64,000 nt of DNA from positions 62,001 to 126,000 of the IMG/VR virus record IMGVR_UViG_3300028676_000005; one strand, written 5' to 3'. A program made the translations under genes and the position numbers. Below, piece by piece: positions 39,080 to 55,252 of the stretch. Every line of letters begins with the position of its first letter. The first letter of the stretch is position 1. The notes below the pieces were generated by a model, which was not told the DNA's origin, ran no database searches, and saw nothing but the letters and a program-made list of their open reading frames with translations.

Positions 39080-40117
39080 TTAACGTCCTGAATGAGAGTT
39101 GCCTGTGTAAAACAACATACGTTCTTGGTCTTGATGACCGATAGTCCCTACGTTGACATGAGGGAAACGATCTTTGAAGGCTGGGCGATAGTTGGAACGA
39201 GACATCCCCATTTCCCACATAGCTTTTTCAACCCACTCCTTGCGCTTATGGTTACGCGGTACCGGGTCTTTCAGATAACCCTCTTTATCCCGAGGTTGTT
39301 TCAGGTCATCTCTGTAAATTTCTGTAATACTGTCGTAATAATCGTAAACACCAAACTCACCACCAAAAGCTTGGTAATCTGGAAACCTTTTCCAGTCCTT
39401 AACAACAAACCCGGCAACCCACAACTCATGTCCCCATACTTGTGCATAAGGACTTTCCTTGGTGTGATCTACAATCCGAGTACTTGTTTCATAAAGATAA
39501 GGGTTGGTTAAGAATCTTGGTTTATTTGTAAAATGCGTGGTAAATGGTTTTTGTTTCTCGTAACCTCCTGACCCATCCAGTTTTTGTTTGTAGTGGTTCA
39601 TAGTAAAAATTGGTGGCATTTCTTTAGCAAATGGGCTTTGTTTTATATGTAACTTTAAATGCCCGTATTGTTTCTGAATGGTCGCTTCTAAATCAAAAGC
39701 AGTCTCTTCGTAACTAATACGACCAACCCTTAACTCAGGTGCTACGAATGCATTATGACTAATAAACTCACCACGACGGAACCCACCGCCTGGCATCATC
39801 AGCCCACGGGCAGGCAAACCGCCAAAGTAGCCCAAAGAACCAATAGCTGTCATTGCTGGACCGCGCACAGCAGGATCTTTACGACGAATAGCATAAACCC
39901 GTTCCAGATGTTCTTTGAACTGTTGGTCGTTCAGATCAGGGCGGATCAAAGCATCCAAACGCGCCAGTGTTTCAGGATCGCTTTCGTAAGGGTGGAATGG
40001 TAACATTGACTTATCGGCAGAACGGGATTCTTTATCGACCAAATCGTCAGCCAACTGGGACAACCCTTCTTCGTAACCTTTATAATCAAATGGTGTGCTA
40101 TCGTCATCGCGTTTCAT
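39080..40117 (-). CDS. Mosaic hypothetical protein with an EF-Tu-like C-terminal peptide
   Basis: 345 aa, AGGAG SD; contains PHVNVGTIGH and GGFRRGE. Confidence 0.8.
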   Translation of the reverse strand: MKRDDDSTPFDYKGYEEGLSQLADDLVDKESRSADKSMLPFHPYESDPETLARLDALIRPDLNDQQFKEHLERVYAIRRKDPAVRGPAMTAIGSLGYFGGLPARGLMMPGGGFRRGEFISHNAFVAPELRVGRISYEETAFDLEATIQKQYGHLKLHIKQSPFAKEMPPIFTMNHYKQKLDGSGGYEKQKPFTTHFTNKPRFLTNPYLYETSTRIVDHTKESPYAQVWGHELWVAGFVVKDWKRFPDYQAFGGEFGVYDYYDSITEIYRDDLKQPRDKEGYLKDPVPRNHKRKEWVEKAMWEMGMSRSNYRPAFKDRFPHVNVGTIGHQDQERMLFYTGNSHSGR

Positions 40118-40175
40118 GGTATTTCTCCTAAAAATAAAAAGGACCAGCGAATGCCAGCCCTTTTACAACAATTAA

Positions 40176-40769
40176 TTAAACGATCTTGGAAGAAGGAGCG
40201 TCACCCAAACGAAGCGTATCCAATGGGTGAGTTTTAAGATCTGAGTGGAATGCTGGTTTGCCGAAGGGAAGCATTTTAACGGAAGTGCTGTTAAACCCTT
40301 CTTTAATAACCTGGAAATAAACAAACTCTTTCCGCCACTTACAAGCCAAAGTCCAGTCAAACTTGAGACCGCAGGTACTGAACAACCATTCTTCTACAAC
40401 GGTGTTGATAATTCCACCAACCACGCCGGTGGTTAATTTGTCGTCAGTAAAGTACGCCTTGGCCAGGTTTTCCAAAGCTTTATCCACACTCAGAGTAACC
40501 CCTTTAATGCGGTAGGTGTATTTACGGGAGCCGTTAACCCACAGATATACCGTTTCATTTTCATTAGAAACGATAACTGTTTTAACATTGCTTTCGCCAT
40601 GGCAGATGCCAAAGAACTTAACATCGTGGGCGAGGCGGTGGTTAAAGGAAAAGGAAGGAACTTCACTTTCCGCCGAAACTGGCATCAGGGTTTCTTTACA
40701 CAACCGCGCAGATTTAGCTGGAACAAAGTAAGCAACGTTGGCACGCAGTTCAAAGGATTTAGTAATCAT
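40176..40769 (-). CDS. Hypothetical protein
   Basis: 197 aa, AGGA SD. Confidence 0.75.
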   Translation of the reverse strand: MITKSFELRANVAYFVPAKSARLCKETLMPVSAESEVPSFSFNHRLAHDVKFFGICHGESNVKTVIVSNENETVYLWVNGSRKYTYRIKGVTLSVDKALENLAKAYFTDDKLTTGVVGGIINTVVEEWLFSTCGLKFDWTLACKWRKEFVYFQVIKEGFNSTSVKMLPFGKPAFHSDLKTHPLDTLRLGDAPSSKIV

Positions 40770-40790
40770 AACGGCATTCCTAGGTAAAAT

Positions 40791-41045
40791 TTAAGAGTTG
40801 AGTTGCTGTTTTTCCGCAATGTCTCTAAGGACATGAATTGCAGCCGGTGCTCTTTCAAGAAGACCAACTAGCAACATTGTTGCTTTAGGGATGGGTGCGT
40901 AGCACGTTTCATAACGAGCAATGTCACTATTACCACGCCCAATCAATGTACTGAATTCTTCTTGTGACATGTGAAGCGACTGACGAACACGACGCATTAA
41001 CTCGGCATGTTCTTTTACAATAGGACGCGCTGGGGTATGAGCCAT
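40791..41045 (-). CDS. XRE-family helix-turn-helix protein
   Basis: MRRVRQSLHMSQEEFSTLIG....IARYE...PIP. Confidence 0.85.
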   Translation of the reverse strand: MAHTPARPIVKEHAELMRRVRQSLHMSQEEFSTLIGRGNSDIARYETCYAPIPKATMLLVGLLERAPAAIHVLRDIAEKQQLNS

Positions 41046-41057
41046 GCCTTCTCCATA

Positions 41058-41090
41058 AGTAAACGTACCGGACTAACCGGTACGTTTACT
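41058..41090 (-). terminator. Hairpin terminator
   Basis: 14-bp stem AGTAAACGTACCGG. Confidence 0.75.
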
Positions 41091-41097
41091 GTGCTAT

Positions 41098-41799
41098 TTA
41101 GCGGATACCGACTTTGAGATACTGGAAGATCTCATTGTTTGGCTGGATACCAAACTTGTCCGCATCGTCGGGGGTATCAATGGCCTGCACACGGCCGGAC
41201 TTGTCGAGATAGAGGACAACGTCACCACGTCCCAGGTGGAGTGTTACAAACTCGGGTGGGGTGTTCAGGGAAAACACACCGTCAAGATCGAAGACGACCA
41301 TGAACTCTTGCCACACTCGATCGGTAACGTCCCATACCCGCCAGCCTTCTTTGAACTTCTCAAACTCCACAGCACGCTCAGGAGAAGGAATAAAGCGTAC
41401 GTTAACGTCTGTACCCATAACACTTGGGCCACCAAAAGGAACCACAGTTACTACTGTGTCCTCGGTTACCTTTAATGAATTTTTCAGTGCCTCAACAAGC
41501 TGACCGCAAGTACCTTCCATAATGCTTTCATGTTTACTGTTAAAAGTAAACGAACCATCCTCGAGCATAAACTGCCCGGTACCACTGGCGGGATGAAACA
41601 TGAACGCACCAGGAATGTGTTGCATACCACCGCCCAAAGTAGGGCGCATGTTGAGATTAGCCGGCGCTGCCACGACTTCAAGCCGCCCCACAGGAGTCAA
41701 CAAAGGGTTACCACCAAATGCGGTGTCATTGCTAAAATCCATTTTAGCTTTGTTGTTTACGGCAGTAGCGTCGAGGTTGATGTTGATGTGCATTGACAT
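41098..41799 (-). CDS. Hypothetical protein
   Basis: Start at ATG 41799 or 41793 after TAAGGA. Confidence 0.75.
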   Translation of the reverse strand: MSMHININLDATAVNNKAKMDFSNDTAFGGNPLLTPVGRLEVVAAPANLNMRPTLGGGMQHIPGAFMFHPASGTGQFMLEDGSFTFNSKHESIMEGTCGQLVEALKNSLKVTEDTVVTVVPFGGPSVMGTDVNVRFIPSPERAVEFEKFKEGWRVWDVTDRVWQEFMVVFDLDGVFSLNTPPEFVTLHLGRGDVVLYLDKSGRVQAIDTPDDADKFGIQPNNEIFQYLKVGIR

Positions 41800-41836
41800 G
41801 TTCCTTAATAATGAAGGGTTGTGTAACTGTGTGCTG

Positions 41837-43081
41837 TTAGTGGCAGAATGCCTTGTATGAAACCGGGGAAGCTTTGCCACGACCACCAACAAACCAATAC
41901 AGGTCAGTTGGTTTCAGAATTGGATTGCCGAATTCACCTTTGGCAAAGTCCATACGCCAAGGTTTGTTATCTTTAGGGTCCACGCCCAGGATGATGATGT
42001 CATCACCGGTAAGTTTGAGTTTGGTAACTTCGGTGATCGACGTTTTGTCAATCTGTTGGAAACCGAAGAGTTCTTTGTACGAGTAACTTTGGAAACGTTC
42101 TGCCGTGAGGCGGTCATCACCATATGGAACTGTGCATTCCGAGATGATGGTGTTGCGACCGGAAGTAACCATCATGCGACCAAAGTAAATGGTCAACGCA
42201 ATGATTGCCACCAGGGAACAGAATACGACACCCATGTTGATACGGCGTTGTACGACACGACGACGTTCAGCAGCGCGGGTTTTGCGAAGTACTGCCAGGC
42301 AGATAATACCCGGATCATTCGACAGGTCTTGCGAATCGTCTAGCTGTTCTACCCGCTCAGACAAATGTTCAATCGCTGTATCGATGTCAGCGGCGGCGGA
42401 TTGCATTGCACGATGGATAGACATTTGACGATTGTTTTCAGGACTGCCTGGACGAGGAGGGATGTTTAACGGATGGTTGTCGTCAGTTAAGAATCGACGC
42501 ATAGCCGGATGGTTTACATTTTGGCCTTCATCACGAGGCCAGTTGCCTTCCGGCTGAACACCAACAGGACGATCACCATCATGATCTTTTGCAAGGAATG
42601 CACGTTCTTCCTCGACATAGACCATAACCACCAATTGAGTAGCCACCATGCGCAACAACTCATTACTTTCCTGAAACCATTCTTTTAGAATAATTTCAAA
42701 GGTTGAACCAGTGTGGCTTACATCACCACCACCCCAGATCGTTATGAGCATTTCGCGAATGGCGTCTTGAGTACTTACGGAAATATCCCACGGGACAGTA
42801 ACCTTAAGCGAATTACCGACATGGGTAACACCAACCGGCGACAAAGCACCCAATGAAATGGTTTTGTTATTTTGGATAAGCGCGCAGTCAACACAACCGA
42901 TACTTCCAAGAAGATGCGCAGCCAAAGCAAACCCACTTGAAAATACACCTTGATCGATAGGGAGATTTTCAGAGGTTACCGCCAGAATGAAAACGCCTTC
43001 TGGTTTTTCTGTCAACGTGGTGCCGTCATTTACAGCGGCTTGACAAAACATTACCAAAGAATCACGGGTAAAACGACGCAT
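41837..43081 (-). CDS. Single-pass membrane protein with a large N-terminal domain
   Basis: 414 aa; Arg-rich stretch, then TM MGVVFCSLVAIIALTIYFG, then a C-terminal domain with two Cys. Confidence 0.8.
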   Translation of the reverse strand: MRRFTRDSLVMFCQAAVNDGTTLTEKPEGVFILAVTSENLPIDQGVFSSGFALAAHLLGSIGCVDCALIQNNKTISLGALSPVGVTHVGNSLKVTVPWDISVSTQDAIREMLITIWGGGDVSHTGSTFEIILKEWFQESNELLRMVATQLVVMVYVEEERAFLAKDHDGDRPVGVQPEGNWPRDEGQNVNHPAMRRFLTDDNHPLNIPPRPGSPENNRQMSIHRAMQSAAADIDTAIEHLSERVEQLDDSQDLSNDPGIICLAVLRKTRAAERRRVVQRRINMGVVFCSLVAIIALTIYFGRMMVTSGRNTIISECTVPYGDDRLTAERFQSYSYKELFGFQQIDKTSITEVTKLKLTGDDIIILGVDPKDNKPWRMDFAKGEFGNPILKPTDLYWFVGGRGKASPVSYKAFCH

Positions 43082-43109
43082 ACTGTACTTCCTTCTGTTA
43101 AGTAATTGT

Positions 43110-43143
43110 TAATACCACTAGCCCGCAAAGGCTAGTGGTATTA
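43110..43143 (-). terminator. Hairpin terminator
   Basis: 14-bp stem TAATACCACTAGCC. Confidence 0.75.
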
Positions 43144-43154
43144 GAGTTGGTACA

Positions 43155-43691
43155 TCAGACGGTCAAACGCGACCGGTTAAACGGTAAGCTGTAGCGACGA
43201 TCAGGATTACGCACATCCCTGAAATAGAGAATAGCGTGTCCGGTCTCTGGCGAGAAATCTCGATTGATACTAAGCGAGTATTCCCCATTGTCTATGTGCA
43301 CCACAATGTGAGGGCGCAAGGTAGTCAATACATAGTTGATGATGGGCAAATATTCGCCATCAAAAAAGTCCTCAATAACCTGTGTCGTCTTTGAACTAAC
43401 CTGGCACCCAGTAAGTTCTTTGCGACTAAGGTTTCCCGCTCCAGCCAGCGCTAGTTCAGCCAACAGAGGTGTAACGTCAACGTTGTTCAGCATGCGCCTG
43501 GTTGGTGTTTGTGGATCGTTGATAATTTCCACCAGACAGTCCATGCCGAAAAGGAACTCACGTATCAGATACTTGGAATCCTTACCGAAAATAGTGACCA
43601 GCTCCGCGGTAAATTTCGGAGTAAGTACATGGTCAAAGTAATTCTGAAAAAGTTTACCTAGAGGGGGTTTTTTGGCAGTATGATTCTCCAT
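43155..43691 (-). CDS. Hypothetical protein (paralogue of 43758-44414)
   Basis: 178 aa, GAGG SD. Confidence 0.8.
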   Translation of the reverse strand: MENHTAKKPPLGKLFQNYFDHVLTPKFTAELVTIFGKDSKYLIREFLFGMDCLVEIINDPQTPTRRMLNNVDVTPLLAELALAGAGNLSRKELTGCQVSSKTTQVIEDFFDGEYLPIINYVLTTLRPHIVVHIDNGEYSLSINRDFSPETGHAILYFRDVRNPDRRYSLPFNRSRLTV

Positions 43692-43736
43692 GGTGTTACC
43701 TCATTAAGGGGAGAGTACCTAAGGGTATTACTTTAC

Positions 43737-43756
43737 ACTGTAATAATGTAGACTTG
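43737..43756 (-). promoter_or_regulatory. Phage early promoter (variant)
   Basis: Minus strand TCTACATTAT-TACA-GT. Confidence 0.6.
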
Positions 43757-43757
43757 A

Positions 43758-44414
43758 TTACTTATGTAAGTTAACTAACCAATCCTTAGGTCCTTGGCAA
43801 AGTAGGAAAGCTGGGTGGAGTCTTTCCAGAAAGAACGGCAATCGCAAAGTGCGTTTGGTTTTCAATTCAATAAAGTCCAGCACACCAAACATTGGGTGAG
43901 GAGTGAGTACCGACAGGTTGAAGATGTAGGTATTCCCCGACATTACAACTGCCACACGGCCCTTGCTATTGGCGTGAAGCAAGCGGAAGATAACGGTGAA
44001 GTAATTGTGGTGAAAGAATTCTTCCAGCAACTTGATAGTTGGGCTACCAACTGATTTGATTTTCCAGTTAGTAGGGTCTTTGGGGTTTGGACGACTGTTG
44101 AAATGGTTATGTACAGATGGCTTGCCACCAAGAGTATCCGGAGTTTCCAGAATACGCTTATCACGGAAATGTGAAGTCGCCATGATGTCAGTGAGTGTAT
44201 CAATGGCGTAAAGCAACTCTGCACGGTCTGCACGGGTCATAGGAGACCCGGTAAAGAAACTATTGGTCTTTGCATCAAGACACGAGTCATGACGGTCGTA
44301 ACGCTCTTTAAAGGTTTCGAACGTTTCTTCTTTAGGGCTATCCCGTTCAACAAGAGCAAGTAGCTCACCAAGACCTGGTTGTGGCATTTTCAAAACAGAA
44401 CTAAACTTTTTCAT
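43758..44414 (-). CDS. Hypothetical protein (paralogue of 43155-43691)
   Basis: 218 aa. Confidence 0.8.
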   Translation of the reverse strand: MKKFSSVLKMPQPGLGELLALVERDSPKEETFETFKERYDRHDSCLDAKTNSFFTGSPMTRADRAELLYAIDTLTDIMATSHFRDKRILETPDTLGGKPSVHNHFNSRPNPKDPTNWKIKSVGSPTIKLLEEFFHHNYFTVIFRLLHANSKGRVAVVMSGNTYIFNLSVLTPHPMFGVLDFIELKTKRTLRLPFFLERLHPAFLLCQGPKDWLVNLHK

Positions 44415-44483
44415 GTAATTGTCCCAATGCTGTGTTATGTTAATAAGTTGACGGTACAGTTATAAAACGATATTGCAGACATA

Positions 44484-44516
44484 ACCCCTACCCACTCTTG
44501 CGAGGGGGTAGGGGGT
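44484..44516 (-). terminator. Hairpin terminator
   Basis: CCCCTACCC/GGGTAGGGG stem; the loop reads GCAA on the minus strand. Confidence 0.75.
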
Positions 44517-44521
44517 AACCT

Positions 44522-45118
44522 TTAAGCTACAGGTTCTGCACCGGCCAGTTGACCGTAGTCGGTGTCAGGGATTTCCAACATTGGGATTACAGCTTCGACC
44601 CAAGTCAGAGTACCGTTGTAAGTAGTACCGGCAATGGCAACAGTAGTGCCACCTTCTGGTACAGTGTAACCATCGTTCTCGTACTGCATTGCTGCGGTCA
44701 GAACGGTGCCTACAGCGGCAGCCACATCGGCGGTTTCGATACCTTCTGGAATTACAACACCAGCGGTAGGAACACCTTCGCCGTCCAGGTAGACGTAAAC
44801 ACCGGCTACCGTTTGTTCGGCCAGAGCTGCTTCGTCAGCCAGAGGAGCACCTGGGTTTTTCAGGGTCCACAGGTTGAGGTCAGTAGCCGCGTTGGCTGCA
44901 GTCCAGGACTGGTTAACACCGCGGAAGCGACGAGTAGCCGACGCAACCGAAGCGTTAAAACGGTTGGGTTGAGCCAACGCAGTGATCGACGTGATTGCTA
45001 CGTCAGGAAAGGTCAAACCGGTAAAGTACGCGAGACTGGTCGCGTCATCTTTGTAACGGTTCAGGTTAAAAGCAAGGAAACGTTCAAAGAACAGTTCCAA
45101 ATGTTTCTTAGCAGCCAT
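44522..45118 (-). CDS. Putative virion protein, paralogue of 22789-23361
   Basis: ATG 45118 after GAGGT; shared N-terminal LF..RF...N..RYKD...L...F.GLT motif; Ala/Thr/Gly-rich. Confidence 0.7.
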   Translation of the reverse strand: MAAKKHLELFFERFLAFNLNRYKDDATSLAYFTGLTFPDVAITSITALAQPNRFNASVASATRRFRGVNQSWTAANAATDLNLWTLKNPGAPLADEAALAEQTVAGVYVYLDGEGVPTAGVVIPEGIETADVAAAVGTVLTAAMQYENDGYTVPEGGTTVAIAGTTYNGTLTWVEAVIPMLEIPDTDYGQLAGAEPVA

Positions 45119-45122
45119 ACCC

Positions 45123-45180: not shown

Positions 45181-45188
45181 TTATTAAG

Positions 45189-46817
45189 TTAGTGTGTGCT
45201 AACAGCAAACAGCTTGCTGGTGATCAACACTGAACTCAGGTTAGCCAGGATTTTGGCAGTTTGCATACCGCCTTTCAACGCTACAACCGAAGCATGTGCT
45301 GTGTCGTAGATACCCAGATCTTCAGGGTAACCAATTTCCCCGTTTGCCAGGTTCACTACGGTAAGGTCACCTTTCAACAGTTCCTTAACGTCAGCGGTCA
45401 GACGTTCGTATTGCATTTCACACACTTCGACAATGTGTTCTAAAATGTTGAGCTTGTTTTGGTCTTTTTCGTTGTAGTATTGGGCAACCACTGTTCGGCA
45501 AGCCTTAATCAGGCTAGTGCCAACCCCAGGCAAGATGCCGTTAGTAAGCGCACTCTTAACAGCTTTGATAACGTCCTCAAAGCGGTCTTTACGCTCTTTA
45601 ACGTCAGCCTCGGTCTCACCGCCAACCCAGATGGTGATAACTTCACCAGAGAGGTTACGAACACGCTCCTCATCAAAACGAGCACGACGACCAAACCGAG
45701 TAGCCCCGTCATAATTACCCAGGGCTTCTTTAATGAGGTCAATACGAGTTTTGATACGCGCTGTTGCCGCAGCATTTGGAGTAAAGACAGAACGGCCAAC
45801 GCCGACGACCAATGGAGTTTCCGTTACCAGCATATTTCTAACGCCACTAACTTGTTCCAGAGCCGACCAAGATGGGACACCAAAGATAGCCGAGAGATCC
45901 TGCATGATCATGCTACCAACTGAACCGCCAGTACCATTAACCCGGCAGCCAATCATGCTCCTGGATGCACGTACGTTGTCAGGATGTTTGTTAAAGCCTA
46001 CTATGAAACTATCCATGGAAGTTTCGATGGAACGACAGATCAGAACAAACACAACATCAGACGCCTCAACAGGTTTAACGGACATAAGCTGTCCCATCAA
46101 CGCACTCAAACGTTCACCATCAGAATTACGAATGGAGTCATCCAGAATAATTGGGATGTATCGGTTGAGTGTACGCTTACCGCCGCTTGGCCCAGAATAA
46201 AGAGCTGAGTTGCTGTACTCCATGTTGATAGTAAGTCCGTTACCACGAACAATCTTGTCGGTATCTTCAACACCGTTAATCAGATCAAACGAAGGGAACG
46301 AATTAGGATTAGCACGATACTGGTCAATGACAATCTGGCTCAACCCTTCATCATTGTTAGACGAAGTAAGAGCCAGTTTGAAAAGCCGATCATCATTAAC
46401 ATCAATAATGATTGCCTGCTCACGCAAAGAGTGAATCAACTTTTCGCCAACTTCTTCGATAAACCGTTGGTCGCGATAGGTTGGATACCCACGGAACAGA
46501 TTGTAGAACGCCGAAGTCAGCATGATGGTAGTGGTGGTGCCGTCACCACATTCTTCATCAGTCTTGATTGGTGCTTGAGTCATGATCTTGTTGACCACTT
46601 CTTCACGCGGGTCGTTGAATGTAATTGCACGAGCAACGGTTACGCCATCTTTGGTAACCTTAGTGCTGTTACCGGTGGTGAGTACTGCCAGACGACCGTT
46701 AGGACCCATCGTGGCGGTTACAGCCTGGTCTACAGTCTCGACCACTTTGGTTACCATTGTTCTTACATCAGCGTCCAGAGTAATGAACTGAACGGCACCA
46801 TTTTTAACTTCCGACAT
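45189..46817 (-). CDS. groEL: Phage GroEL-like chaperonin
   Basis: TMGPNGR, TKDGVTVA, GDGTTT, ERKDRFED and GILPGVG motifs; 542 aa; no GGM tail. Confidence 0.95.
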   Translation of the reverse strand: MSEVKNGAVQFITLDADVRTMVTKVVETVDQAVTATMGPNGRLAVLTTGNSTKVTKDGVTVARAITFNDPREEVVNKIMTQAPIKTDEECGDGTTTTIMLTSAFYNLFRGYPTYRDQRFIEEVGEKLIHSLREQAIIIDVNDDRLFKLALTSSNNDEGLSQIVIDQYRANPNSFPSFDLINGVEDTDKIVRGNGLTINMEYSNSALYSGPSGGKRTLNRYIPIILDDSIRNSDGERLSALMGQLMSVKPVEASDVVFVLICRSIETSMDSFIVGFNKHPDNVRASRSMIGCRVNGTGGSVGSMIMQDLSAIFGVPSWSALEQVSGVRNMLVTETPLVVGVGRSVFTPNAAATARIKTRIDLIKEALGNYDGATRFGRRARFDEERVRNLSGEVITIWVGGETEADVKERKDRFEDVIKAVKSALTNGILPGVGTSLIKACRTVVAQYYNEKDQNKLNILEHIVEVCEMQYERLTADVKELLKGDLTVVNLANGEIGYPEDLGIYDTAHASVVALKGGMQTAKILANLSSVLITSKLFAVSTH

Positions 46818-49099: not shown

Positions 49100-49147
49100 A
49101 CAAACTCCAATAAAAAATAAGAGGACAGGACGCCCTCTTATTAATTG

Positions 49148-49705: not shown

Positions 49706-49751
49706 GGTATTTCCTTAATTGCCAAAAGGCTAATTGTTGGGTTGTTGTATG

Positions 49752-49994
49752 TTAGGAAAACAGGATCGAGTTGTAGCCAAAGCTAGCGGCGACCATCTCA
49801 ATGAGAAGGAACACAACTACCAGAATAAGCACCGCTGCCAAAGAGCAGAGTATCTTGAGGCCACGCTCGTAGAAGTGAGAGAGATCTGTACGCTCTAGTT
49901 CTCTTTCTTGGACACGCACAATCGCGACCAAGAGAACCAGAACAACCAGAAGCATTGCCATGAACTTGTTTTGTGTAAAGCCGCCGCTGAGCAT
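49752..49994 (-). CDS. Two-TM early membrane protein
   Basis: 80 aa, two hydrophobic helices, GGAGG SD, first gene after a promoter. Confidence 0.75.
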   Translation of the reverse strand: MLSGGFTQNKFMAMLLVVLVLLVAIVRVQERELERTDLSHFYERGLKILCSLAAVLILVVVFLLIEMVAASFGYNSILFS

Positions 49995-50030
49995 AAATAT
50001 TCCTCCGTGATTAATTTTGGTTTACTACTC

Positions 50031-50050
50031 ACCGGAGTAATATAGATCCA
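50031..50050 (-). promoter_or_regulatory. Phage early promoter
   Basis: Minus strand TCTATATTAC-TCCG-GT. Confidence 0.8.
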
Positions 50051-50068
50051 AGCTTTTCCAAAAGTTAA

Positions 50069-50578
50069 TCAGAAATTGTTATGGTACATTGTTGTATAAA
50101 TGGGTCCCTCTTGTTCAAGGACAAACCCGAGTTTGAGATAGAGACGCAAAGCGTTGAGGTTAAAATTAACCACTGTAAGCTTTAAACGATCTTTAAAAAT
50201 CTCCATATGGTTACGGATCAAATAACTAGCAATACCCAAACCACGACAATCCTCACGAACAAACAATGCCGAAACAACGTTAGGCTCATCTACGGTCATG
50301 AATGCAACCGGGGTAATACCAAAATAAACCACGTACGTCCACTTGGCTTTCTTAGCACACATTACCCAATAAGTTTTAAGCTTGGGCATGTCGTCACGAG
50401 AATCTGCCGCCGAATGTTTCAGAGAGTCATTAGGAGCACCATTTTCAATAAACGTAAGGTCGCTACGTGTAAGCTCCATCCACAGTTCCATTACGTCCGT
50501 GGAAACTTTTGTAGGCACGCACTGGTGAGCGTACATCTTGAGCTTACCAAAGTGGTGAAGCTGTAAATCATTCTGCAT
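50069..50578 (-). CDS. GNAT acetyltransferase
   Basis: LFVREDCRGLGIA (motif A) and N.NALRLY.KLGF; start ATG 50578. Confidence 0.9.
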   Translation of the reverse strand: MQNDLQLHHFGKLKMYAHQCVPTKVSTDVMELWMELTRSDLTFIENGAPNDSLKHSAADSRDDMPKLKTYWVMCAKKAKWTYVVYFGITPVAFMTVDEPNVVSALFVREDCRGLGIASYLIRNHMEIFKDRLKLTVVNFNLNALRLYLKLGFVLEQEGPIYTTMYHNNF

Positions 50579-51218
50579 TGGTGAGTTCCTTACGGGCAAG
50601 CACCAGAAGTGATTCCAGTTCCTTCAAGGTGTAATGCCCGTCTACCACAGCGTGATCACCGCGGAAATCAATGTAGCTTTTGTCGGCCCCGTCAACGATG
50701 TTGTTGTGATATTCCATGTTAACCGGAGTAGTCGCTATTGATTCAGCAAAACCTGTAGCCCATGGTGACGCGGTCATGGTTACATCAAATCCAGTGCGGG
50801 TGGCCAGCTTAAGCAGCTCAGGATGATCCCCGCCCCATCTTGATACAAACTGTTGGTGCTCGTCCTTACGGAATTTCTTAAACTCCATAATGAGATTTGT
50901 TGCGATGCGCTGTTTGCGATACGGGGGGTCTACATACACCTCGAGTACTCGGTTACCAGCACAAATTACGTAGCCAACATATTCATTAGAAGTCGACAAA
51001 GAAGCATCAAAGGCAAGACCGATGTAATCCACACCAGTGTCAAGAATAGAAGAAAACTCTGCTATTCGCACGCCGTCACCAACGATATACGGAATATTGT
51101 AAAGTTTGCTAAATAGCGCAATAAACTTTTCAAATACGTGCTTGTAGAAAGTGGGGGAAAACTCTTTACCTGCTTCAGCTTTATGGTTGCGTTCAAAATC
51201 ACGATACATAATAGTCAT
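50568..51218 (-). CDS. GNAT acetyltransferase with an extra C-terminal module
   Basis: VYVDPPYRKQRIAT and LATRTGF; ATG 51218 with AGGAGG SD. Confidence 0.8.
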   Translation of the reverse strand: MTIMYRDFERNHKAEAGKEFSPTFYKHVFEKFIALFSKLYNIPYIVGDGVRIAEFSSILDTGVDYIGLAFDASLSTSNEYVGYVICAGNRVLEVYVDPPYRKQRIATNLIMEFKKFRKDEHQQFVSRWGGDHPELLKLATRTGFDVTMTASPWATGFAESIATTPVNMEYHNNIVDGADKSYIDFRGDHAVVDGHYTLKELESLLVLARKELTNAE

Positions 51219-51219
51219 G

Positions 51220-51720
51220 TTAGTCATCCTCCTTCTCAAGTTCTTGTTCTGCCAGTTCAACAATCGCCCTTAACTCATTAAGGGTATACCGCCCATCCAC
51301 AATTGCGTGTGTTCCGCGAAATTCGAGAAGACCCTGGTTACCCGACAGCACAACTCTTGGACTTGGTTGTTTGGGGGTGATGTAGTTACGTTGGAAATCC
51401 AACATGAACTCACCTACTTTACGATTCAACCCACCTTTAGCAATAAACATGTGCGTACAGCGAACATTAGAGCTATAAACATAACCAAGCATTTTGTTTT
51501 CTTTATCTGTCGCTATAATGATCCACTCTACTCCACCGCTAATCAGTTGTTGCCAAATTGCATCTGTGGGTTCAATGATCCGATGAGTACGATAGGCTAT
51601 GTTTTGGCAATACAGTTCCAAAAAACCTGGTTTGATCTTCTCATGGAACTCTGCGCTAAAATCGCTTGTAAGCGCATCCAGCATGCGATTGTGTTCATAC
51701 CGCGTAACAGTAATACCCAT
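51220..51720 (-). CDS. Degenerate/truncated GNAT paralogue
   Basis: Collinear with 50568-51218 (FSAEF, LGYV, MFI...NRKVG); shares the C-terminal FRG.HA.VDG.YTL.EL. Confidence 0.65.
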   Translation of the reverse strand: MGITVTRYEHNRMLDALTSDFSAEFHEKIKPGFLELYCQNIAYRTHRIIEPTDAIWQQLISGGVEWIIIATDKENKMLGYVYSSNVRCTHMFIAKGGLNRKVGEFMLDFQRNYITPKQPSPRVVLSGNQGLLEFRGTHAIVDGRYTLNELRAIVELAEQELEKEDD

Positions 51721-51748
51721 AAATAAAAAATCCTTAAAGAGGTGGTGA

Positions 51749-51769
51749 GTGGGTAGCAACGCTACCCAC
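51749..51769 (-). terminator. Hairpin terminator
   Basis: GTGGGTAGC/GCTACCCAC stem. Confidence 0.6.
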
Positions 51770-51777
51770 CCTACAGG

Positions 51778-52212
51778 TTAGTGTTTGGTGCAGCCGGCCA
51801 AAACAATACCACGGTTAATTGGAGACATTGGCGGCTTGGTGCGGTCGCCCATGTAGATCAGGAAATACAGATTGCCATTAGGGGCAAACTTTTTGAACAT
51901 CATGTCGATCGCATTACCAGAAATTCCGGTAATAGCACCACCGACAGGGATACTTAGTTTCAACTCATCCGTGAAGAGGATGTTCTTCTCCACAGTAAAC
52001 ATGTACTTGGTTTGGGTGATAGTGGTTTCCAGTTCTACTACCGGGTTATCGGTAACAAAACCGTTTTCACCATCGACGACGTTGTCGGTGTACTTGGTGC
52101 AGGTGTAACTGGTGTCGACTTTGGCATCCTCAATATAAGGAGCTTGGTAAACGGAACCAAAACAGATAGCGGGTACCAACAGTGCGAGTGCCAAAGATGC
52201 TTGTTTAAACAT
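51778..52212 (-). CDS. Secreted/periplasmic protein
   Basis: Signal peptide MFKQASLALALLVPAICFG; Cys near each end of the mature chain. Confidence 0.8.
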   Translation of the reverse strand: MFKQASLALALLVPAICFGSVYQAPYIEDAKVDTSYTCTKYTDNVVDGENGFVTDNPVVELETTITQTKYMFTVEKNILFTDELKLSIPVGGAITGISGNAIDMMFKKFAPNGNLYFLIYMGDRTKPPMSPINRGIVLAGCTKH

Positions 52213-52238
52213 GGTGTACTCCTAATGGTAACTTCTTA

Positions 52239-52601
52239 TTAGCGATTAAAATTGAATTCGGGACGACTCACCCCAAGTATTTTTAATACGGGGTCTTCGC
52301 CTTTACCGAAGGGAGGAGACTTGCGGTTAATGCTGAATTGCTTATCTTCCAACTTGGCAAACCCACGGTTTAAAGCCACCACTCGCGGCGCACCGGTTTG
52401 CCGCATATGCCACAATACCCAGTCGTTAGACAAGAGGTTATCAAAACCTCCGGTCAACTTAGGTTCTAGATCCAGCGCAAGTTTAATACGATTAAGTACT
52501 AACGTTGCATTAGGTCCCAGAACATTGCTGATGGGTTTAAGGGCAAGCGCTGGCCTTTTTACAAGACGATCGGGTCCTTCATCCCCATGAAAATCAGCCA
52601 T
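52239..52601 (-). CDS. Hypothetical protein
   Basis: 120 aa. Confidence 0.7.
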   Translation of the reverse strand: MADFHGDEGPDRLVKRPALALKPISNVLGPNATLVLNRIKLALDLEPKLTGGFDNLLSNDWVLWHMRQTGAPRVVALNRGFAKLEDKQFSINRKSPPFGKGEDPVLKILGVSRPEFNFNR

Positions 52602-52606
52602 GTTAG

Positions 52607-53542
52607 TTACCCCTTGTTTTTTGGATTTTCATAAGACAGGGTGTTTGCGTACTTTTCGGCAGCAGTCTCATGATTACTCTTAAGCAGGTTGTAATTTTTC
52701 ATGATTACTTCCCGCATGATGGTGTTGCCATTCTGGGTACAGACATAAATAGCCTGGTTACCAGCAGAGTCGTGAGCGATATGTAGCACACGGTTGTCAC
52801 TGGTAACGTGTGTACGATGATAAACGTCGCCCTCCATAAGAGCAGGAATGGTGACGTTGAAGCCTTCTGGGGCTTCTTTACCGCTCAGTGAATTCCAGAG
52901 AGAACGCGGGCCGGTCAGGGCTTCTGGAAGTTTAAAGCACGGACTGTCGTTAATAACGATTTCCGCACGGTTACCTTCTTTGTCCAACGGCATTTGGTCA
53001 TCAGGAATTACTGTGCAGATAACCCCACGATCACCGTGCATATCGGTGAGTTTGTAAGGATACTTGTGTTCGCCCAAAGCAGCGCGACCTTTGTCAGTAA
53101 GACATTGTGAAGTCAAACAGTCGTGATCAAGTAATGCAAGATCCAGACCTTCACCACGAATGTCCATTTGTTCTTGTTGACCTGGATGAATCAGACCGGC
53201 AGTTTCTGCATTGGCCTTTGCATTCATTGCGTCGTAAATGAGTTGATCCGCTCCAGGCATGACACCTTCAAAATCAGCGTTCATCCCCTTTACATGTCGG
53301 TGTGGGGTAATTGCATATGACACACCGCCAATCGATACCCAATCGCCAGTGATATGAATACCACAAAAGCCCCAAAAGGACTTTACCACTTTGCGCATAT
53401 GACCTTGCATTTGGTCAATGCCCAAAACAATGGACGCACGATCTTCCGCAGAGGCCTGATTCCAGAAGTCCATAACAAACTTTTGGATTGCTTCGTTACC
53501 TTCAACGTCAGCCAAGTCTTTGATGAAATCAAAAATGTTCAT
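52607..53542 (-). CDS. Mosaic protein with RNA polymerase active-site-like peptides
   Basis: 311 aa, GAGG SD; NADFEG and KLTDMHGDRGVIC...DDQMPLDKEGNRAEIVIN. Confidence 0.8.
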   Translation of the reverse strand: MNIFDFIKDLADVEGNEAIQKFVMDFWNQASAEDRASIVLGIDQMQGHMRKVVKSFWGFCGIHITGDWVSIGGVSYAITPHRHVKGMNADFEGVMPGADQLIYDAMNAKANAETAGLIHPGQQEQMDIRGEGLDLALLDHDCLTSQCLTDKGRAALGEHKYPYKLTDMHGDRGVICTVIPDDQMPLDKEGNRAEIVINDSPCFKLPEALTGPRSLWNSLSGKEAPEGFNVTIPALMEGDVYHRTHVTSDNRVLHIAHDSAGNQAIYVCTQNGNTIMREVIMKNYNLLKSNHETAAEKYANTLSYENPKNKG

Positions 53543-53564
53543 GGTGTTACCTCATTAATTAAAT

Positions 53565-53774
53565 TTAGGCAGCAGCTTTACAGATGCCACGCTTGACAGG
53601 TTGTTTGTTGATACGGAGCATTGCAGCCATTACAGCACGATTGTAGGTTGCGTTAAACGCGGCTTGGTACCACTCAACCCATTTAACGTTGATTGCGCTT
53701 GGATCACCATCACAGCTTACTACAAGAGCAGGCTCACTAGTGAGGGTGTGGTTCTTCTTGATGCAAGTTTTCAT
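53565..53774 (-). CDS. Small protein with a WxxWY module
   Basis: 69 aa. Confidence 0.65.
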   Translation of the reverse strand: MKTCIKKNHTLTSEPALVVSCDGDPSAINVKWVEWYQAAFNATYNRAVMAAMLRINKQPVKRGICKAAA

Positions 53775-54024
53775 TTGGTTTATCTTCCATGGTGAACAAC
53801 CCCAGCCGATCTTTCAGCAGGGATGGTTTATTTTTGGTGCTCGGCAGCGCAGGAACACTGGTGTCGAGTTGTTTAAGAAATTTGTGGACATTCCGGCCAG
53901 CGTCCAATTCAAAGTTACCAAACCCAATGGTCAGATACTCATCAGACGTCAAGCCCAACTTGATGCTACCCTCTGCGAACACGGCCGCGAGCAATCGTGC
54001 ACCTAAACTATCATTAACGTACAT
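53737..54024 (-). CDS. Hypothetical protein
   Basis: Start ATG 54024 or 54036. Confidence 0.6.
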   Translation of the reverse strand: MYVNDSLGARLLAAVFAEGSIKLGLTSDEYLTIGFGNFELDAGRNVHKFLKQLDTSVPALPSTKNKPSLLKDRLGLFTMEDKPNENLHQEEPHPH

Positions 54025-54026
54025 AG

Positions 54027-54341
54027 TCACCACCATACTGTCTTGTGCGCTTCTGGAAGTACTTTACCTTCTGCCTTTTCTTTAATACGTCTTTTGCACG
54101 TATTCAAAGCAATGTTAGAAGATACCCTTTTACGAATACGATACCATTTTTGCCAAAGAGGATTTGGCTTGCCAGACGTAGTTTCCAATTCTGGCTCAGG
54201 CAAGATAGCAATTCTTTCACAAAAAGCACGATGTGCTGATGTGGGAGTTGCCTTATGTAAGGCGGTGTACCACTCGGTCCAGGCAGATTGATTAAATCCA
54301 CCCTCTTCCGTAAACAACAAAGGTTCTTTGTTTTCGGTCAT
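54027..54341 (-). CDS. Early protein with two WxxWY modules
   Basis: 104 aa, AGGTG SD, first gene after a promoter. Confidence 0.75.
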   Translation of the reverse strand: MTENKEPLLFTEEGGFNQSAWTEWYTALHKATPTSAHRAFCERIAILPEPELETTSGKPNPLWQKWYRIRKRVSSNIALNTCKRRIKEKAEGKVLPEAHKTVWW

Positions 54342-54377
54342 AACGGTGTCACCTAATTAAATTGTTTAACCTTACTT

Positions 54378-54397
54378 ACACGAGTAATATAGGTTCA
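54378..54397 (-). promoter_or_regulatory. Phage early promoter
   Basis: Minus strand GAACCTATATTAC-TCGT-GT. Confidence 0.8.
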
Positions 54398-54463
54398 AAC
54401 AATCCTAGAAATTAAACGGTTTACCATATAGATGAGGTTACAGTACAAAAGAAAGAACCTTAC

Positions 54464-54498
54464 TAATACCCTCTAGCCCAAAAGGCTAGAGGGTATTA
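54464..54498 (-). terminator. Hairpin terminator
   Basis: 15-bp stem TAATACCCTCTAGCC. Confidence 0.8.
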
Positions 54499-54499
54499 A

Positions 54500-54709
54500 C
54501 TAACTGCGGCTACGACCTTTTTTGGCTTTCTTTGGATAAGTAGATGCCGGGCTGGCTTTAATGCCACACAGCACTTTCTTAACACTGTTCCCAAATGCTG
54601 CGGTTGCATGGAGCAACACTCCAGCTGCACGAGAACCCCCAATAAGCAAAATCTTTTTATCAGGGTTTTCATCATCTTGTAATTCAAGAGACTTAATAGT
54701 TTCGTTCAT
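54500..54709 (-). CDS. Small basic protein
   Basis: 69 aa, AAGGAG SD. Confidence 0.7.
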   Translation of the reverse strand: MNETIKSLELQDDENPDKKILLIGGSRAAGVLLHATAAFGNSVKKVLCGIKASPASTYPKKAKKGRSRS

Positions 54710-54718
54710 ACCGACTCC

Positions 54719-55252
54719 TTAAACAGTACGGGTTTTATCAGCCCAGTCCAGCAGGATGTCTTCTATGTCAAAGTAAACTTCTTTGTCGTGACTGTGTGGT
54801 CGCACAATGCCTTTATTAAGCTCTTTACGCAAAGTTTCAAACACAGCCATCATCTTGTCAGGATCAGGATGGGAACGATCCAGCACAGACCCGTCAGCGT
54901 GTTTGGTGGGATTGAGCGACGTACCTGTTTCTTCATTCAGAAATACCTGAGCATAGATACCCAAGTTTTGACTGTTGATGAAATCCAGATTGGCCAGCTC
55001 GCCTTTGTAGAAACACAATGTGCGAGAGGTACTGTCAATAACACCTGAAAAGTTGAGCAAGTCTTTTTCAAACTCTTCTTTGCAGGTGCCTTCCAGTGGG
55101 TGATTGGTATGTGCTTCCACAATACGACCACCGGACACATTGATTACACCGATACCCAGATCCCAACGAACTTGGGTTTCTGCCCCTGCTTCAATGACGT
55201 GACCGTGTTGCTTGATCTCATCTTTGAAGTTTACATCCATAATCCAACCCAT
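54719..55252 (-). CDS. Hypothetical protein
   Basis: 177 aa. Confidence 0.75.
   Translation of the reverse strand: MGWIMDVNFKDEIKQHGHVIEAGAETQVRWDLGIGVINVSGGRIVEAHTNHPLEGTCKEEFEKDLLNFSGVIDSTSRTLCFYKGELANLDFINSQNLGIYAQVFLNEETGTSLNPTKHADGSVLDRSHPDPDKMMAVFETLRKELNKGIVRPHSHDKEVYFDIEDILLDWADKTRTV

What the first reader, a model, noticed from the sequence alone, without database searches (positions are those of the whole stretch)
39080..55252. Possible 'motif scrapbook' system: orphan catalytic motifs recur across accessory ORFs
Seen: besides the RNAP and EF-Tu grafts, several hypothetical proteins contain isolated signature peptides out of fold context. GGGFRRGEF (39764-39790) resembles the segment before Walker A in DnaB/RecA-type helicases. 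AKDHDGDR (core at 42572-42586) is DxDGD-like. VVFDLDGVF (about 41272-41298) and VYFDIEDILLDW (C-terminus of 54719-55252) resemble HAD motif I. KKILLIGGSRAAG (54500-54709) is Rossmann-like. Inference: early genes may repeatedly capture the most conserved peptides of essential enzymes, which are the features pattern-recognition defences detect, and use them as decoys. Each short motif is weak alone; the two long grafts anchor the idea.
Basis: inference. Interest (0 to 1): 0.65.

Follow-up and report, generated by a model that had tools for sequence, protein, structure and literature searches.

The report
Enzyme-core peptide pieces in phage proteins
In a block of fast-evolving accessory genes of an uncultured jumbo phage, four of the five short "catalytic motifs" are chance, but two proteins really do carry conserved excerpts of enzyme active centres (phage RNA polymerase beta, EF-Tu, probably the phage's DnaB-like helicase); the RNA-polymerase excerpt recurs in many unrelated small phage proteins and its function is unknown.

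Summary
The window is part of a 229-kb phiKZ-like (chimallivirus-type) jumbo phage record. A 25-pattern library of canonical catalytic motifs hits the 22 unknown ORFs 8 times against 15.1 expected. No HAD or helicase family appears in Pfam or PHROGs, and the only Rossmann-type hit (E 0.082) is far below its cut-off. The catalytic Asp of VVFDLDGVF and the DHDGD peptide are lost in diverged homologues. The two HAD-like peptides, DHDGD and the Rossmann-like peptide are therefore chance. Two proteins are different. The 345-aa ORF (39080-40117) ends in a conserved copy of EF-Tu residues 5-28. With the family profile, the 56 best PDB hits are EF-Tu, and synonymous changes lie inside the motif. Its GGGFRRGEF aligns best with the strand before Walker A of the phage's own DnaB-like helicase (shuffle P about 0.01). 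The 311-aa ORF (52607-53542) holds a 40-aa excerpt of the nvRNAP beta active-site segment (E 4.8e-13) and an invariant NADF(E/D)G block. The same beta excerpt occurs in about 26 small proteins of differing architecture. These are selected, shuffled modules. I infer peptide mimicry, but the decoy function is untested.

The parts
39080..40117 (-). 345-aa accessory protein with no Pfam or PHROG family; a mosaic that carries the helicase-like and EF-Tu-like pieces
   Evidence: Eight homologues at 46-84% identity in syntenic metagenomic jumbo-phage contigs. The ESM Atlas model has pLDDT 0.30.
39749..39796 (-). MPGGGFRRGEFISHNA (aa 108-123), which resembles the strand before Walker A of the phage's own DnaB-like helicase (PDGGFRRSKFYLLNALTNRGKS); no Walker A follows
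   Evidence: G111, G112 and I119 are invariant in A1. The best local alignment to the helicase sits here, shuffle P 0.009; for P0008 P is 0.01. GGGLRRGE[FW] recurs in P0019, P0021 and P0024.
39083..39292 (-). Conserved C-terminal module (aa 276-345), the best-conserved part of the family
   Evidence: Alignment A1. P0009 carries the same module behind an unrelated N-terminus.
39128..39181 (-). AFKDRFPHVNVGTIGHQD (aa 313-330), a copy of EF-Tu residues about 5-22; PHVNVGTIGH is identical to the EF-Tu chain 5i4r_C, and the P-loop Lys-Thr is missing (GHQDQER)
   Evidence: With the family profile, the 56 best PDB hits are EF-Tu, best E 2.1e-4. In L008 six of the ten motif codons differ synonymously with no amino-acid change.
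52607..53542 (-). 311-aa accessory protein: a helical N-domain, a poorly modelled motif region and a beta-rich C-part
   Evidence: Family of 7 sequences. AF2 pLDDT is 70-85 for aa 1-70 and below 50 for aa 78-222.
52931..53059 (-). PYKLTDMHGDRGVICTVIPDDQMPLDKEGNRAEIVINDSPCFK (aa 162-204), an excerpt of the nvRNAP beta active-site segment (equivalent to E. coli beta 1065-1100, which holds GDK...RHGNKGV)
   Evidence: phiKZ gp71 E 2.4e-7, 4.8e-13 with the family profile. PHROG 3295 E 6.5e-14. hhalign 98.7%. 45% identical to the phage's own beta aa 406-447. The same module is in 26 other small-protein rows.
53213..53284 (-). MNADFEGVMPGADQLIYDAMNAKA (aa 87-110), which resembles the beta' Mg-binding motif NADFDGDQM with a 5-residue insert
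   Evidence: N88, A89, D90, F91, G93, P96, G97, D99 and Q100 are invariant. It is the only such hexapeptide in the genome besides the true beta'. It is not significant by alignment or profile search, so it is suggestive only.
53075..53119 (-). CLTSQCLTDKGRAAL (aa 142-156), a third conserved block of unknown origin that travels with the other two
41272..41298 (-). VVFDLDGVF in the 232-aa ORF 41098-41796 (true start is the internal ATG); a chance look-alike of HAD motif I
42569..42592 (-). AKDHDGDR in the hypervariable linker of the 414-aa membrane protein 41837-43081; chance
   Evidence: Absent from L008 and L009.
54620..54658 (-). KKILLIGGSRAAG in the 69-aa ORF 54500-54709; a real gene, but the peptide is not a GxGxxG motif
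54743..54778 (-). VYFDIEDILLDW near the C-terminus of the 177-aa ORF 54719-55252; does not fit HAD motif I
45189..46817 (-). GroEL-like chaperonin (context marker of the EL/RisingSun-type jumbo phages)
   Evidence: Pfam Cpn60_TCP1 1.2e-22, PHROG 5725 3.8e-112, about 40% identity to phage EL.
50069..51759 (-). Three adjacent ORFs. The first (50069-50599) passes the Pfam GNAT cut-off. The second (50568-51263) gives only sub-threshold GNAT hits. The third (51220-51759) has no family hit and shares only a 39-aa C-terminal module with the second. A GNAT gene lies near the module-bearing gene in relatives too.

Best explanation
The 16-kb stretch is a one-strand block of small, fast-evolving accessory genes of an uncultured phiKZ-like jumbo phage. 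It is not a general scrapbook. Both HAD-like peptides, DHDGD and the Rossmann-like peptide are chance resemblances.

Shown: two proteins are mosaics of short (15-45 aa) conserved modules set in variable sequence that structure predictors model poorly. The 311-aa protein holds a roughly 40-aa excerpt of the phage-type non-virion RNA polymerase beta subunit. This is the double-psi-barrel segment with the two active-site basic residues. It also holds an invariant NADF(E/D)G...DQ block that looks like the beta' Mg-binding loop. The 345-aa protein ends in a copy of EF-Tu residues 5-28, which is strand beta1 up to but not including the P-loop Lys-Thr. It also holds a look-alike of the equivalent pre-Walker-A strand of the phage's own DnaB-like helicase. 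The pieces are kept by purifying selection at the peptide level. The beta piece has sharp, constant boundaries and sits in about 26 small proteins of different architecture at the corresponding locus of related phages.

Inferred: the pieces arose when gene fragments were copied and fused (from the phage's own beta and helicase genes, and from a proteobacterial-type tuf). They were retained as functional modules and shuffled. None of them can be catalytic on its own, because the P-loop lysines are gone and no barrel is predicted. The most likely mode of action is therefore peptide mimicry: the excerpt occupies the surface that normally receives that segment, for example the beta' side of the RNAP active centre, or a factor or chaperone that handles nascent EF-Tu or helicase. 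It would then act as a competitor, regulator or decoy during takeover or in conflicts between phages or between phage and host.
For: The peptides are present.

There is no general enrichment: 8 hits against 15.1 expected, 69 against 74.1 genome-wide, and no HAD or helicase family from Pfam or PHROGs and only one far-sub-threshold Rossmann-type hit. The short motifs are lost in diverged homologues.

Beta piece: PDB phiKZ gp71 E 2.4e-7, rising to 4.8e-13 with the family profile. hhalign gives 98.7%, with its confident part limited to aa 159-205. The phage already has a full-length beta at genome 216467-218677. 214 profile hits include about 30 small proteins that carry the module alone, duplicated or in swapped order. 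The column-by-column conservation in the small proteins matches that of true beta: the first Lys is K in 20 of 25 rows and the second basic residue is K or R in 24 of 26. Positional homologues lie beside GNAT genes.

EF-Tu piece: 10 of 10 residues identical. It is conserved across homologues of 46-84% overall identity, and P0008 reads GHKDHGR. With the family profile, the 56 best PDB hits are EF-Tu, best E 2.1e-4. Synonymous substitutions lie inside the motif.

Helicase piece: the best local alignment falls exactly on the pre-Walker-A strand, P 0.009 and 0.01.

Poor models: AF2 pLDDT is below 50 across aa 78-222. Local pLDDT reaches 72-94 on the beta piece but without any barrel. The Atlas models have pLDDT 0.30 and 0.44.
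Against: No binding partner or activity was shown, and the complex prediction with the phage beta' fragment gave no verdict. The NADF(E/D)G block is not significant against beta' by local alignment (P 0.13-0.31) or by profile search (no beta' among PDB hits at E<=10). The helicase resemblance rests on P of about 0.01 from non-independent homologues, and profile A1 did not find any DnaB in PDB. The copied segments are buried strands and loops in the parent enzymes rather than surface epitopes, which makes simple interface mimicry less obvious. Low pLDDT may only reflect shallow alignments of 7 to 38 sequences. All relatives are metagenomic, and no cultured phage carries these small proteins.
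Confidence: 0.5

Rival explanations
1. The excerpts are decoys for host pattern-recognition defences or for defence effectors that attack conserved enzymes. They would soak up sensors, proteases or toxins that would otherwise hit EF-Tu, RNAP or the helicase.
For: The pieces are real, conserved and taken from the most conserved parts of essential enzymes. The locus is hypervariable, as expected in an arms race. Defences that act on or through EF-Tu exist: Lit, type IV Thoeris and Avs7 (PMC13581612; 10.1101/2024.10.24.620036).
Against: The published EF-Tu cleavage sites (R45, R59, Gly59-Ile60) lie outside the copied residues 5-28. The Avs7 paper shows its sensor bound to EF-Tu domains II-III, not to the N-terminal strand (PMC13581612). 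The known bacterial sensors described there recognise folded proteins, not linear peptides. A decoy that binds a sensor could just as well trigger it. The beta piece copies the phage's own polymerase type, not the host's. No PADLOC or anti-defence search was run, so this lacks any direct test.
Confidence: 0.13
2. Neutral relics. The pieces are simply the last recognisable parts of decayed duplicated or captured genes. Only the most conserved segment of a parent stays detectable, so an ascertainment bias makes them look like chosen catalytic motifs. The host proteins would work independently of them.
For: Fragment mosaicism is common in phage proteins (PMC10684548). hhalign extends weakly beyond the beta core, to aa 261. 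One borderline match links the C-part of the 311-aa protein to a 487-aa protein encoded near the beta gene (E 1e-4).
Against: The excerpts are the best-conserved parts of their families and carry synonymous changes. The beta module has the same sharp boundaries in about 26 unrelated contexts, occurs duplicated and in swapped order, and keeps the parent's residue-by-residue conservation. Each protein combines pieces from two different parents, which decay of a single paralogue cannot produce.
Confidence: 0.15
3. The 311-aa family is a genuine minimal nucleotidyl-transferase or NTP-binding protein. It would unite a beta'-type acidic loop and a beta-type basic loop in one small (pseudo-)double-psi barrel.
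For: Three acidic residues (D90, E/D92, D99) and two basic residues (K164, R/K172) are conserved. Two homologues carry the beta piece in tandem, as expected if halves pair into a barrel.
Against: AF2 predicts no barrel and almost no regular structure in the region. Many family members carry only one of the two blocks. About 110 aa is too short for two barrels. The second basic residue is Asn in two small proteins (P0025 and P0052).
Confidence: 0.05
4. Everything, including the two long pieces, is coincidence.
Against: E-values of 4.8e-13 (beta) and 2.1e-4 (EF-Tu) with exclusively on-target hit lists, and conservation across families.
Confidence: 0.02

Closest known systems
phiKZ-type non-virion RNA polymerase beta subunit (phiKZ gp71/73, PDB 7OGP chain C; PHROG 3295)
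   Same: aa 162-204 of the 311-aa protein align with residues 384-420 of phiKZ gp71 and keep the K...HG.(K/R)GV...P.D.MP.D..GN.A(E/D)I signature.
   Different: Only about 40 of about 700 residues are shared. The phage has its own full beta elsewhere. No polymerase fold is predicted. The piece also occurs in proteins as small as 59 aa.
Elongation factor Tu (G domain, strand beta1 and G1 motif)
   Same: F....PHVNVGTIGH.D matches EF-Tu residues 5-22, with ten consecutive identities.
   Different: The P-loop Lys-Thr is replaced (GHQDQER). There are no G2-G5 motifs and no domains II or III, and the protein ends 17 residues later. The piece is C-terminal in a 345-aa protein, whereas it is N-terminal in EF-Tu.
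Protein-fragment mosaicism in phage proteins (Smug et al. 2023, PMC10684548)
   Same: The same short segment appears in proteins of otherwise unrelated sequence, with shuffled order and duplication.
   Different: As I recall that study (I saw only its abstract), it concerns domain-sized fragments, mainly in host-interaction and core proteins. Here the units are 15-45-aa excerpts of catalytic centres of an RNA polymerase, a GTPase and a helicase, placed in orphan accessory proteins.
Phage proteins that work by molecular mimicry, and integrated decoys of plant NLR receptors (own knowledge)
   Same: The proposed logic is the same: a copied piece of a target or partner competes for what binds the original.
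   Different: No partner is known here. The copied parts are buried strands and loops rather than whole-surface mimics. In the NLR case the decoy belongs to the host, not to the parasite.
HAD phosphatases and Rossmann-fold dinucleotide-binding domains
   Same: One peptide fits DxDx[TV], and one is a hydrophobic strand followed by glycines.
   Different: The catalytic Asp are not conserved, motifs II-IV are absent, there is no GxGxxG, and no profile hit passes a cut-off.

Membership tests
HAD superfamily | Motif I hhhDxDx[T/V] with both Asp conserved in homologues | tested here: not met
   VVFDLDGVF becomes FFFDLNKEGVY in L009, so both Asp are replaced. VYFDIEDILLDW does not fit the pattern at all.
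HAD superfamily | Profile match over the Rossmannoid core (motifs II-IV) | tested here: not met
   Pfam at E<=10 gives no HAD or hydrolase family for either ORF. PHROGs gives none for ORF 41098-41892; the 177-aa ORF 54719-55252 was not scanned against PHROGs.
Rossmann-fold NAD(P)/FAD-binding domain | GxGxxG/A loop after strand beta1, and a profile match | tested here: not met
   IGGSRAAG is not GxGxxG. The best Pfam hit, Eno-Rase_NADH_b, has E 0.082 and 13.1 bits against a 23.4-bit cut-off, in a 69-aa protein.
DnaB/RecA-type P-loop helicase or recombinase | Walker A G/AxxxxGK[S/T] directly after the strand | tested here: not met
   The 345-aa ORF has no Walker A. The similarity to the phage helicase stops just before its GKS.
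DnaB/RecA-type P-loop helicase or recombinase | Sequence similarity of the pre-Walker-A strand | tested here: inconclusive
   The best local alignment falls exactly there, P 0.009 (P0008: 0.01). No DnaB appears among the PDB hits of profile A1.
Translational GTPase (EF-Tu) | G1 motif GHVDHGKT with Lys-Thr; G2-G5; domains II and III | tested here: not met
   The ORF reads GHQDQER and ends 17 aa later. The matches cover EF-Tu residues 5-28 only.
Multisubunit RNAP beta subunit (Rpb2 domain 6) | A match over the whole domain above the Pfam cut-off | tested here: not met
   PF00562 scores 15.7 bits against 23.4, covering 35 of 373 positions. PHROG 3295 covers positions 394-435 of 698.
Two-barrel (double-psi beta-barrel) polymerases | Two DPBB folds carrying the acidic triad and the basic pair | tested here: inconclusive
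   Residues resembling both signatures are conserved, but AF2 gives no barrel and low confidence. The alignments are shallow.
Shuffled protein-fragment module (mosaicism) | The same segment with constant boundaries in proteins of unrelated architecture | tested here: met
   The beta piece is in 26 further small-protein rows of A4, alone, duplicated or in swapped order. The EF-Tu module also sits in P0009 behind a different N-terminus.
Anti-defence decoy | Binds or neutralises a host defence component | not testable with these tools
   This needs experiments. The literature check gave no matching target site.

The most novel reading that the evidence does not exclude
A lineage of uncultured chimallivirus-like jumbo phages may deploy a previously undescribed class of small effectors. 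These would be built from portable 15-45-aa excerpts of NTP-binding catalytic centres: the nvRNAP beta and beta' active-site loops, and the pre-P-loop strands of EF-Tu and DnaB. They would act as peptide mimics, meaning dominant-negative inhibitors, regulators or decoys of the polymerase, translation or replication machinery of the host, of the phage itself or of competing phages.
Probability: 0.2. Interest if true: 0.8.

Novelty: new variant of a known kind. Interest (0 to 1): 0.55.

Why it matters
If the excerpts work as mimics, they would be a new way for phages to interfere with, or regulate, polymerases and P-loop NTPases. The roughly 40-aa beta module would then be a ready-made probe or inhibitor scaffold for phiKZ-type RNA polymerases, whose assembly and regulation are poorly understood. 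The result also carries a practical caution. Single short 'signature' peptides in orphan phage ORFs are usually chance. Conservation in diverged homologues and a shuffled control separate the few real cases from the many look-alikes.

Tried and rejected
1. Cultured-phage and IMG/VR searches. Megablast and tblastn of the 345-aa, 232-aa and 177-aa ORFs against cultured phages, and a viral-contig scan, found nothing. The 311-aa ORF and P0023 hit only true beta subunits there.

3. AlphaFold2 on the 311-aa family (pLDDT 45) and on its motif core with 38 rows (pLDDT 64, pTM 0.25) gave no usable fold, so no fold search was run.

4. Complex prediction of the beta piece (aa 150-215) with the phage beta' fragment carrying NADFDGD gave no verdict (score 0.00). 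It counts neither for nor against binding.

5. The ESM Atlas feature hits scored 0.84 or less, which is noise level. The faint zincin-protease leads were discarded because no HExxH motif is present. Structure hits had TM below 0.4.

6. The idea that the EF-Tu piece is a pseudo-substrate for EF-Tu-cleaving defences was rejected for the known cases. Lit cuts at Gly59-Ile60 and type IV Thoeris at R45 and R59, all outside residues 5-28.

7. The idea that NADFEG aligns with the beta motif GYNFED, which would make the protein a complete beta barrel, was rejected: hhalign does not extend upstream of aa 153.

8. The match of the 311-aa C-part to the 487-aa PHROG-3520 protein near the beta gene (E 1e-4) lies close to the best reversed-control hit (5.5e-4). 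That protein has no RNAP hit in PDB, so the match was left as borderline.

9. A DNA-level origin of the EF-Tu piece (a recent copy of host tuf, or an RNA decoy) was set aside. The homologues differ synonymously inside the motif, so selection acts on the peptide.

Full report
**What the window is**

The window is bases 62001-126000 of a 229,429-bp IMG/VR virus record rated complete. It encodes a GroEL-like chaperonin about 40% identical to those of phages EL and RisingSun. It also encodes a UvsX-like recombinase, a helicase, a tail fibre and a virion protein. Elsewhere in the genome lie a full-length phiKZ-type non-virion RNA polymerase (nvRNAP) beta subunit (genome 216467-218677; PHROG 3295, E 6e-208) and a beta' with NADFDGD. 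The phage is therefore an uncultured phiKZ-like, chimallivirus-type jumbo phage. The flagged stretch, 39080-55252, is a run of about 26 small genes, all on the minus strand. Most have no family assignment. The same gene order is found in several metagenomic contigs.

**The observation**

The ORF holding VVFDLDGVF most likely starts at the internal ATG (232 aa), as in its relatives.

**Are the short motifs more than chance?**

I wrote a library of 25 canonical catalytic patterns (Walker A and B, HAD I, DxDGD, GxGxxG, DEAD, polymerase, metallophosphatase, SAM, protease, GNAT, GTPase and others). I counted hits in the 22 ORFs of the block that have no family.
- The block gave 8 hits against 15.1 expected from 2000 composition-preserving shuffles (P of at least that many = 0.98).
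- Six motif classes were hit against 6.8 expected.
- Genome-wide, with a 22-pattern subset, ORFs of 350 aa or less gave 69 against 74.1, and longer ORFs gave 144 against 129.6.
- Pfam, even at E<=10, returns no HAD or helicase family for the motif-bearing ORFs. PHROGs returns none for the ORFs that were scanned. The only Rossmann-type hit is Eno-Rase_NADH_b at E 0.082, 13.1 bits against a 23.4-bit cut-off, for the 69-aa ORF.

**Conservation test**

- In the most diverged syntenic homologue (L009), VVFDLDGVF reads FFFDLNKEGVY, so both would-be catalytic Asp are replaced.
- DHDGD sits in a hypervariable linker and is absent from L008 and L009.
- The 177-aa and 69-aa ORFs have only near-identical homologues, so conservation says nothing. 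Their peptides also do not fit the HAD I or GxGxxG patterns.
- Both HAD-like peptides, DHDGD and the Rossmann-like peptide are therefore chance resemblances.

**The EF-Tu piece**

The 345-aa ORF (39080-40117) ends with AFKDRFPHVNVGTIGHQDQER followed by 12 more residues. PHVNVGTIGH is identical to the PDB EF-Tu chain 5i4r_C. Eight homologues at 46-84% overall identity exist. In their alignment the C-terminal 70 residues are the best-conserved part, and P, N, V, G, T, G, H and D of the motif are invariant. P0008 reads GHKDHGR, still closer to EF-Tu. P0009 carries the module behind an unrelated N-terminus.

A profile of the family searched against PDB returns EF-Tu as its 56 best hits (59 of the 60 listed). 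The best E is 2.1e-4, and full-length chains score 0.002-0.02. The matches always cover residues 5-28. In L008, six of the ten motif codons differ synonymously without any amino-acid change, so selection acts on the peptide and not on the DNA. The piece is not a GTPase: the P-loop Lys-Thr is gone and nothing follows.

**GGGFRRGEF**

This peptide is conserved in the same family. The phage's own DnaB-like helicase (genome 176387-177919) reads PDGGFRRSKFYLLNALTNRGKS at its Walker A. The best Smith-Waterman alignment between the 345-aa protein and that helicase falls exactly on this strand (score 52; 0.9% of 1000 shuffles reach it). P0008 gives PRGGFRHGQFITQNALTSR with P 0.01. The similarity stops just before GKS.

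Related peptides, GGGLRRGE(F/W), occur in P0019, P0021 and P0024, which also share other modules with the 311-aa protein. Profile A1 found no DnaB in PDB.

**The RNA polymerase piece**

The 311-aa ORF (52607-53542) matches phiKZ gp71 (nvRNAP beta, PDB 7OGP) over aa 162-198.
- E is 2.4e-7 for the single sequence and 4.8e-13 with the family profile. AR9 and bacterial beta subunits follow.
- Profile-profile comparison with 20 jumbo-phage beta subunits gives 98.7% probability. The confident part is restricted to aa 159-205.
- The piece is 45% identical to the phage's own beta and 55-62% identical to the beta subunits of RisingSun, LucasX and D6.
- It corresponds to E. coli beta 1065-1100, the barrel segment with the two active-site lysines (alignment; the role of the residues is established knowledge).

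A profile search of 1.84 billion representatives found 214 hits. Most are roughly 700-aa beta subunits matched only over this segment. About 30 are small proteins (59-351 aa, a few longer) in which the same 36-40 residues sit in unrelated contexts, sometimes twice (P0016, P0022) or in swapped order (P0019). In a joint alignment the boundaries are sharp. The residue-by-residue conservation in the small proteins mirrors that of true beta: F/Y-K-L-T-D-x-H-G-(D/G)-(R/K)-G-V-(I/V)-C-x-V-x-P-D-(D/E)-x-M-P-x-D-x-x-G-N-x-A-(E/D)-I. Three such proteins that I located lie in arrays of small one-strand genes, two of them next to GNAT genes. That is the position of the 311-aa gene in this window.

**A second block in the same protein**

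While aligning the family I found an invariant block, MNADF(E/D)G(V/I)xPGxDQ(L/M), at aa 87-100. It resembles the universal beta' motif NADFDGDQM with a five-residue insert. The only other such hexapeptide in the genome is in the true beta'. A rough residue-frequency estimate puts its chance occurrence in a 311-aa protein near 2e-5 (my own arithmetic, not a tool result). However, local alignment to the phage beta' is not significant (P 0.13-0.31), and no beta' appears among the profile's PDB hits. I treat this block as suggestive only. A third block, CLTSQCLTDKGRxAL, travels with these two.

**Structure and binding**

AlphaFold2 models only the N-terminal 70 residues of the 311-aa protein with confidence. 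Residues 78-222, which hold all three blocks, fall below pLDDT 50. With a 38-row alignment the beta piece reaches pLDDT 72-94 locally, but without a barrel (pTM 0.25). The Atlas models of both proteins are poor, with pLDDT 0.30 and 0.44. A complex prediction of the beta piece with the phage beta' fragment gave no verdict.

**Is there more of this in the genome?**

An all-against-all BLASTP of 238 ORFs, with reversed queries as control, shows only one match between a core enzyme and an accessory ORF below the best reversed-control E-value (5.5e-4; most controls were above 4e-3). That match is the beta piece, at 2.8e-7. Other sub-threshold matches are ordinary paralogues. One is a 39-aa C-terminal module shared by the adjacent ORFs 50568-51263 and 51220-51759.

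**Interpretation**

Shown: two accessory proteins are mosaics that contain selected excerpts of catalytic centres. The beta excerpt is a portable module.

Inferred: the pieces arose by copying and fusing gene fragments. Since they cannot be catalytic, they most likely act by peptide mimicry, competing for whatever normally receives that strand or loop.

The decoy version of this idea is possible but has no specific support. The EF-Tu-cleaving defences described in the papers I read cut at R45, R59 or Gly59-Ile60, and Avs7 is shown bound to EF-Tu domains II-III (PMC13581612; 10.1101/2024.10.24.620036). Pure decay of paralogues does not explain the constant boundaries, the shuffling, the two-parent combinations or the conservation.

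I found no description of such proteins in the jumbo-phage comparative survey (PMC7824862) or in four literature searches. Fragment mosaicism as such is known (PMC10684548).

**Verdict**

The scrapbook as stated does not hold. Its core, two proteins with three or four real excerpts, is genuine, appears to be undescribed and is worth an experiment.

Noticed in passing
window 41837-43081 (-): The 414-aa membrane protein is sharply mosaic. Its C-terminal two-thirds (from GVQPEGNWPRDEG onward, including a transmembrane segment) are almost identical in the window, L007 and L009. Its N-terminal third is highly divergent.
   Followed up: partly
window 54500-55252 (-) compared with 52607-53542 (-): The 69-aa and 177-aa ORFs are 97-100% identical to those of contigs L010 and L011, while the neighbouring 311-aa gene is only 61-63% identical in the same contigs. 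This points to recent recombination or very uneven evolutionary rates.
   Followed up: no
window 54027-54341, 53565-53774, 59225-59719; also P0019, P0021, P0023, P0024, P0031, P0085: A short W-x-x-W-Y module (for example AWTEWY, LWQKWY, KWVEWY, EWCDWYE, KWIDWY) recurs in several small ORFs of this block and in the module-bearing proteins of related phages.
   Followed up: partly
window 50568-51263 and 51220-51759 (-): These two adjacent, overlapping ORFs share a 39-aa C-terminal module (F-R-G-x-H-A-(I/V)-V-D-G-x-Y-T-L-x-E-L...), 46% identical, E 1e-7. The first has weak GNAT hits.
   Followed up: no
genome ends (G000:C1 228683-229429 joined to 1 onward): The nvRNAP beta' N-terminal subunit gene runs across the ends of the record. 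Joining the end to the start gives a 564-codon open frame containing NADFDGD, so the record is a circular permutation.
   Followed up: partly
window 40791-41045 (-): An 84-aa MqsA-antitoxin-like HTH protein (Pfam 7.5e-8) sits between the unknown ORFs. It is present in L007 and L008 but not called in L009.
   Followed up: no
window 36901-38025 (+): This 374-aa ORF lies opposite the minus-strand genes 36688-37623 and 37717-38253, in a locally GC-richer stretch (0.51). It is probably a shadow frame, because relatives call only the minus-strand genes.
   Followed up: no
window 39080-40117 aa 93-110 compared with P0019 aa 179-197: A second short shared block, YFGG(L/S)P(A/N)R..MM.G, links the 345-aa protein to the P0019 family at a different position from the GGG(F/L)RRGE block (pairwise E 0.011).
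   Followed up: no
window 55261-55944 (-): A calcineurin-like metallophosphoesterase (Pfam 3e-14) lies directly beyond the flagged block and is conserved in L010 and L011.
   Followed up: no
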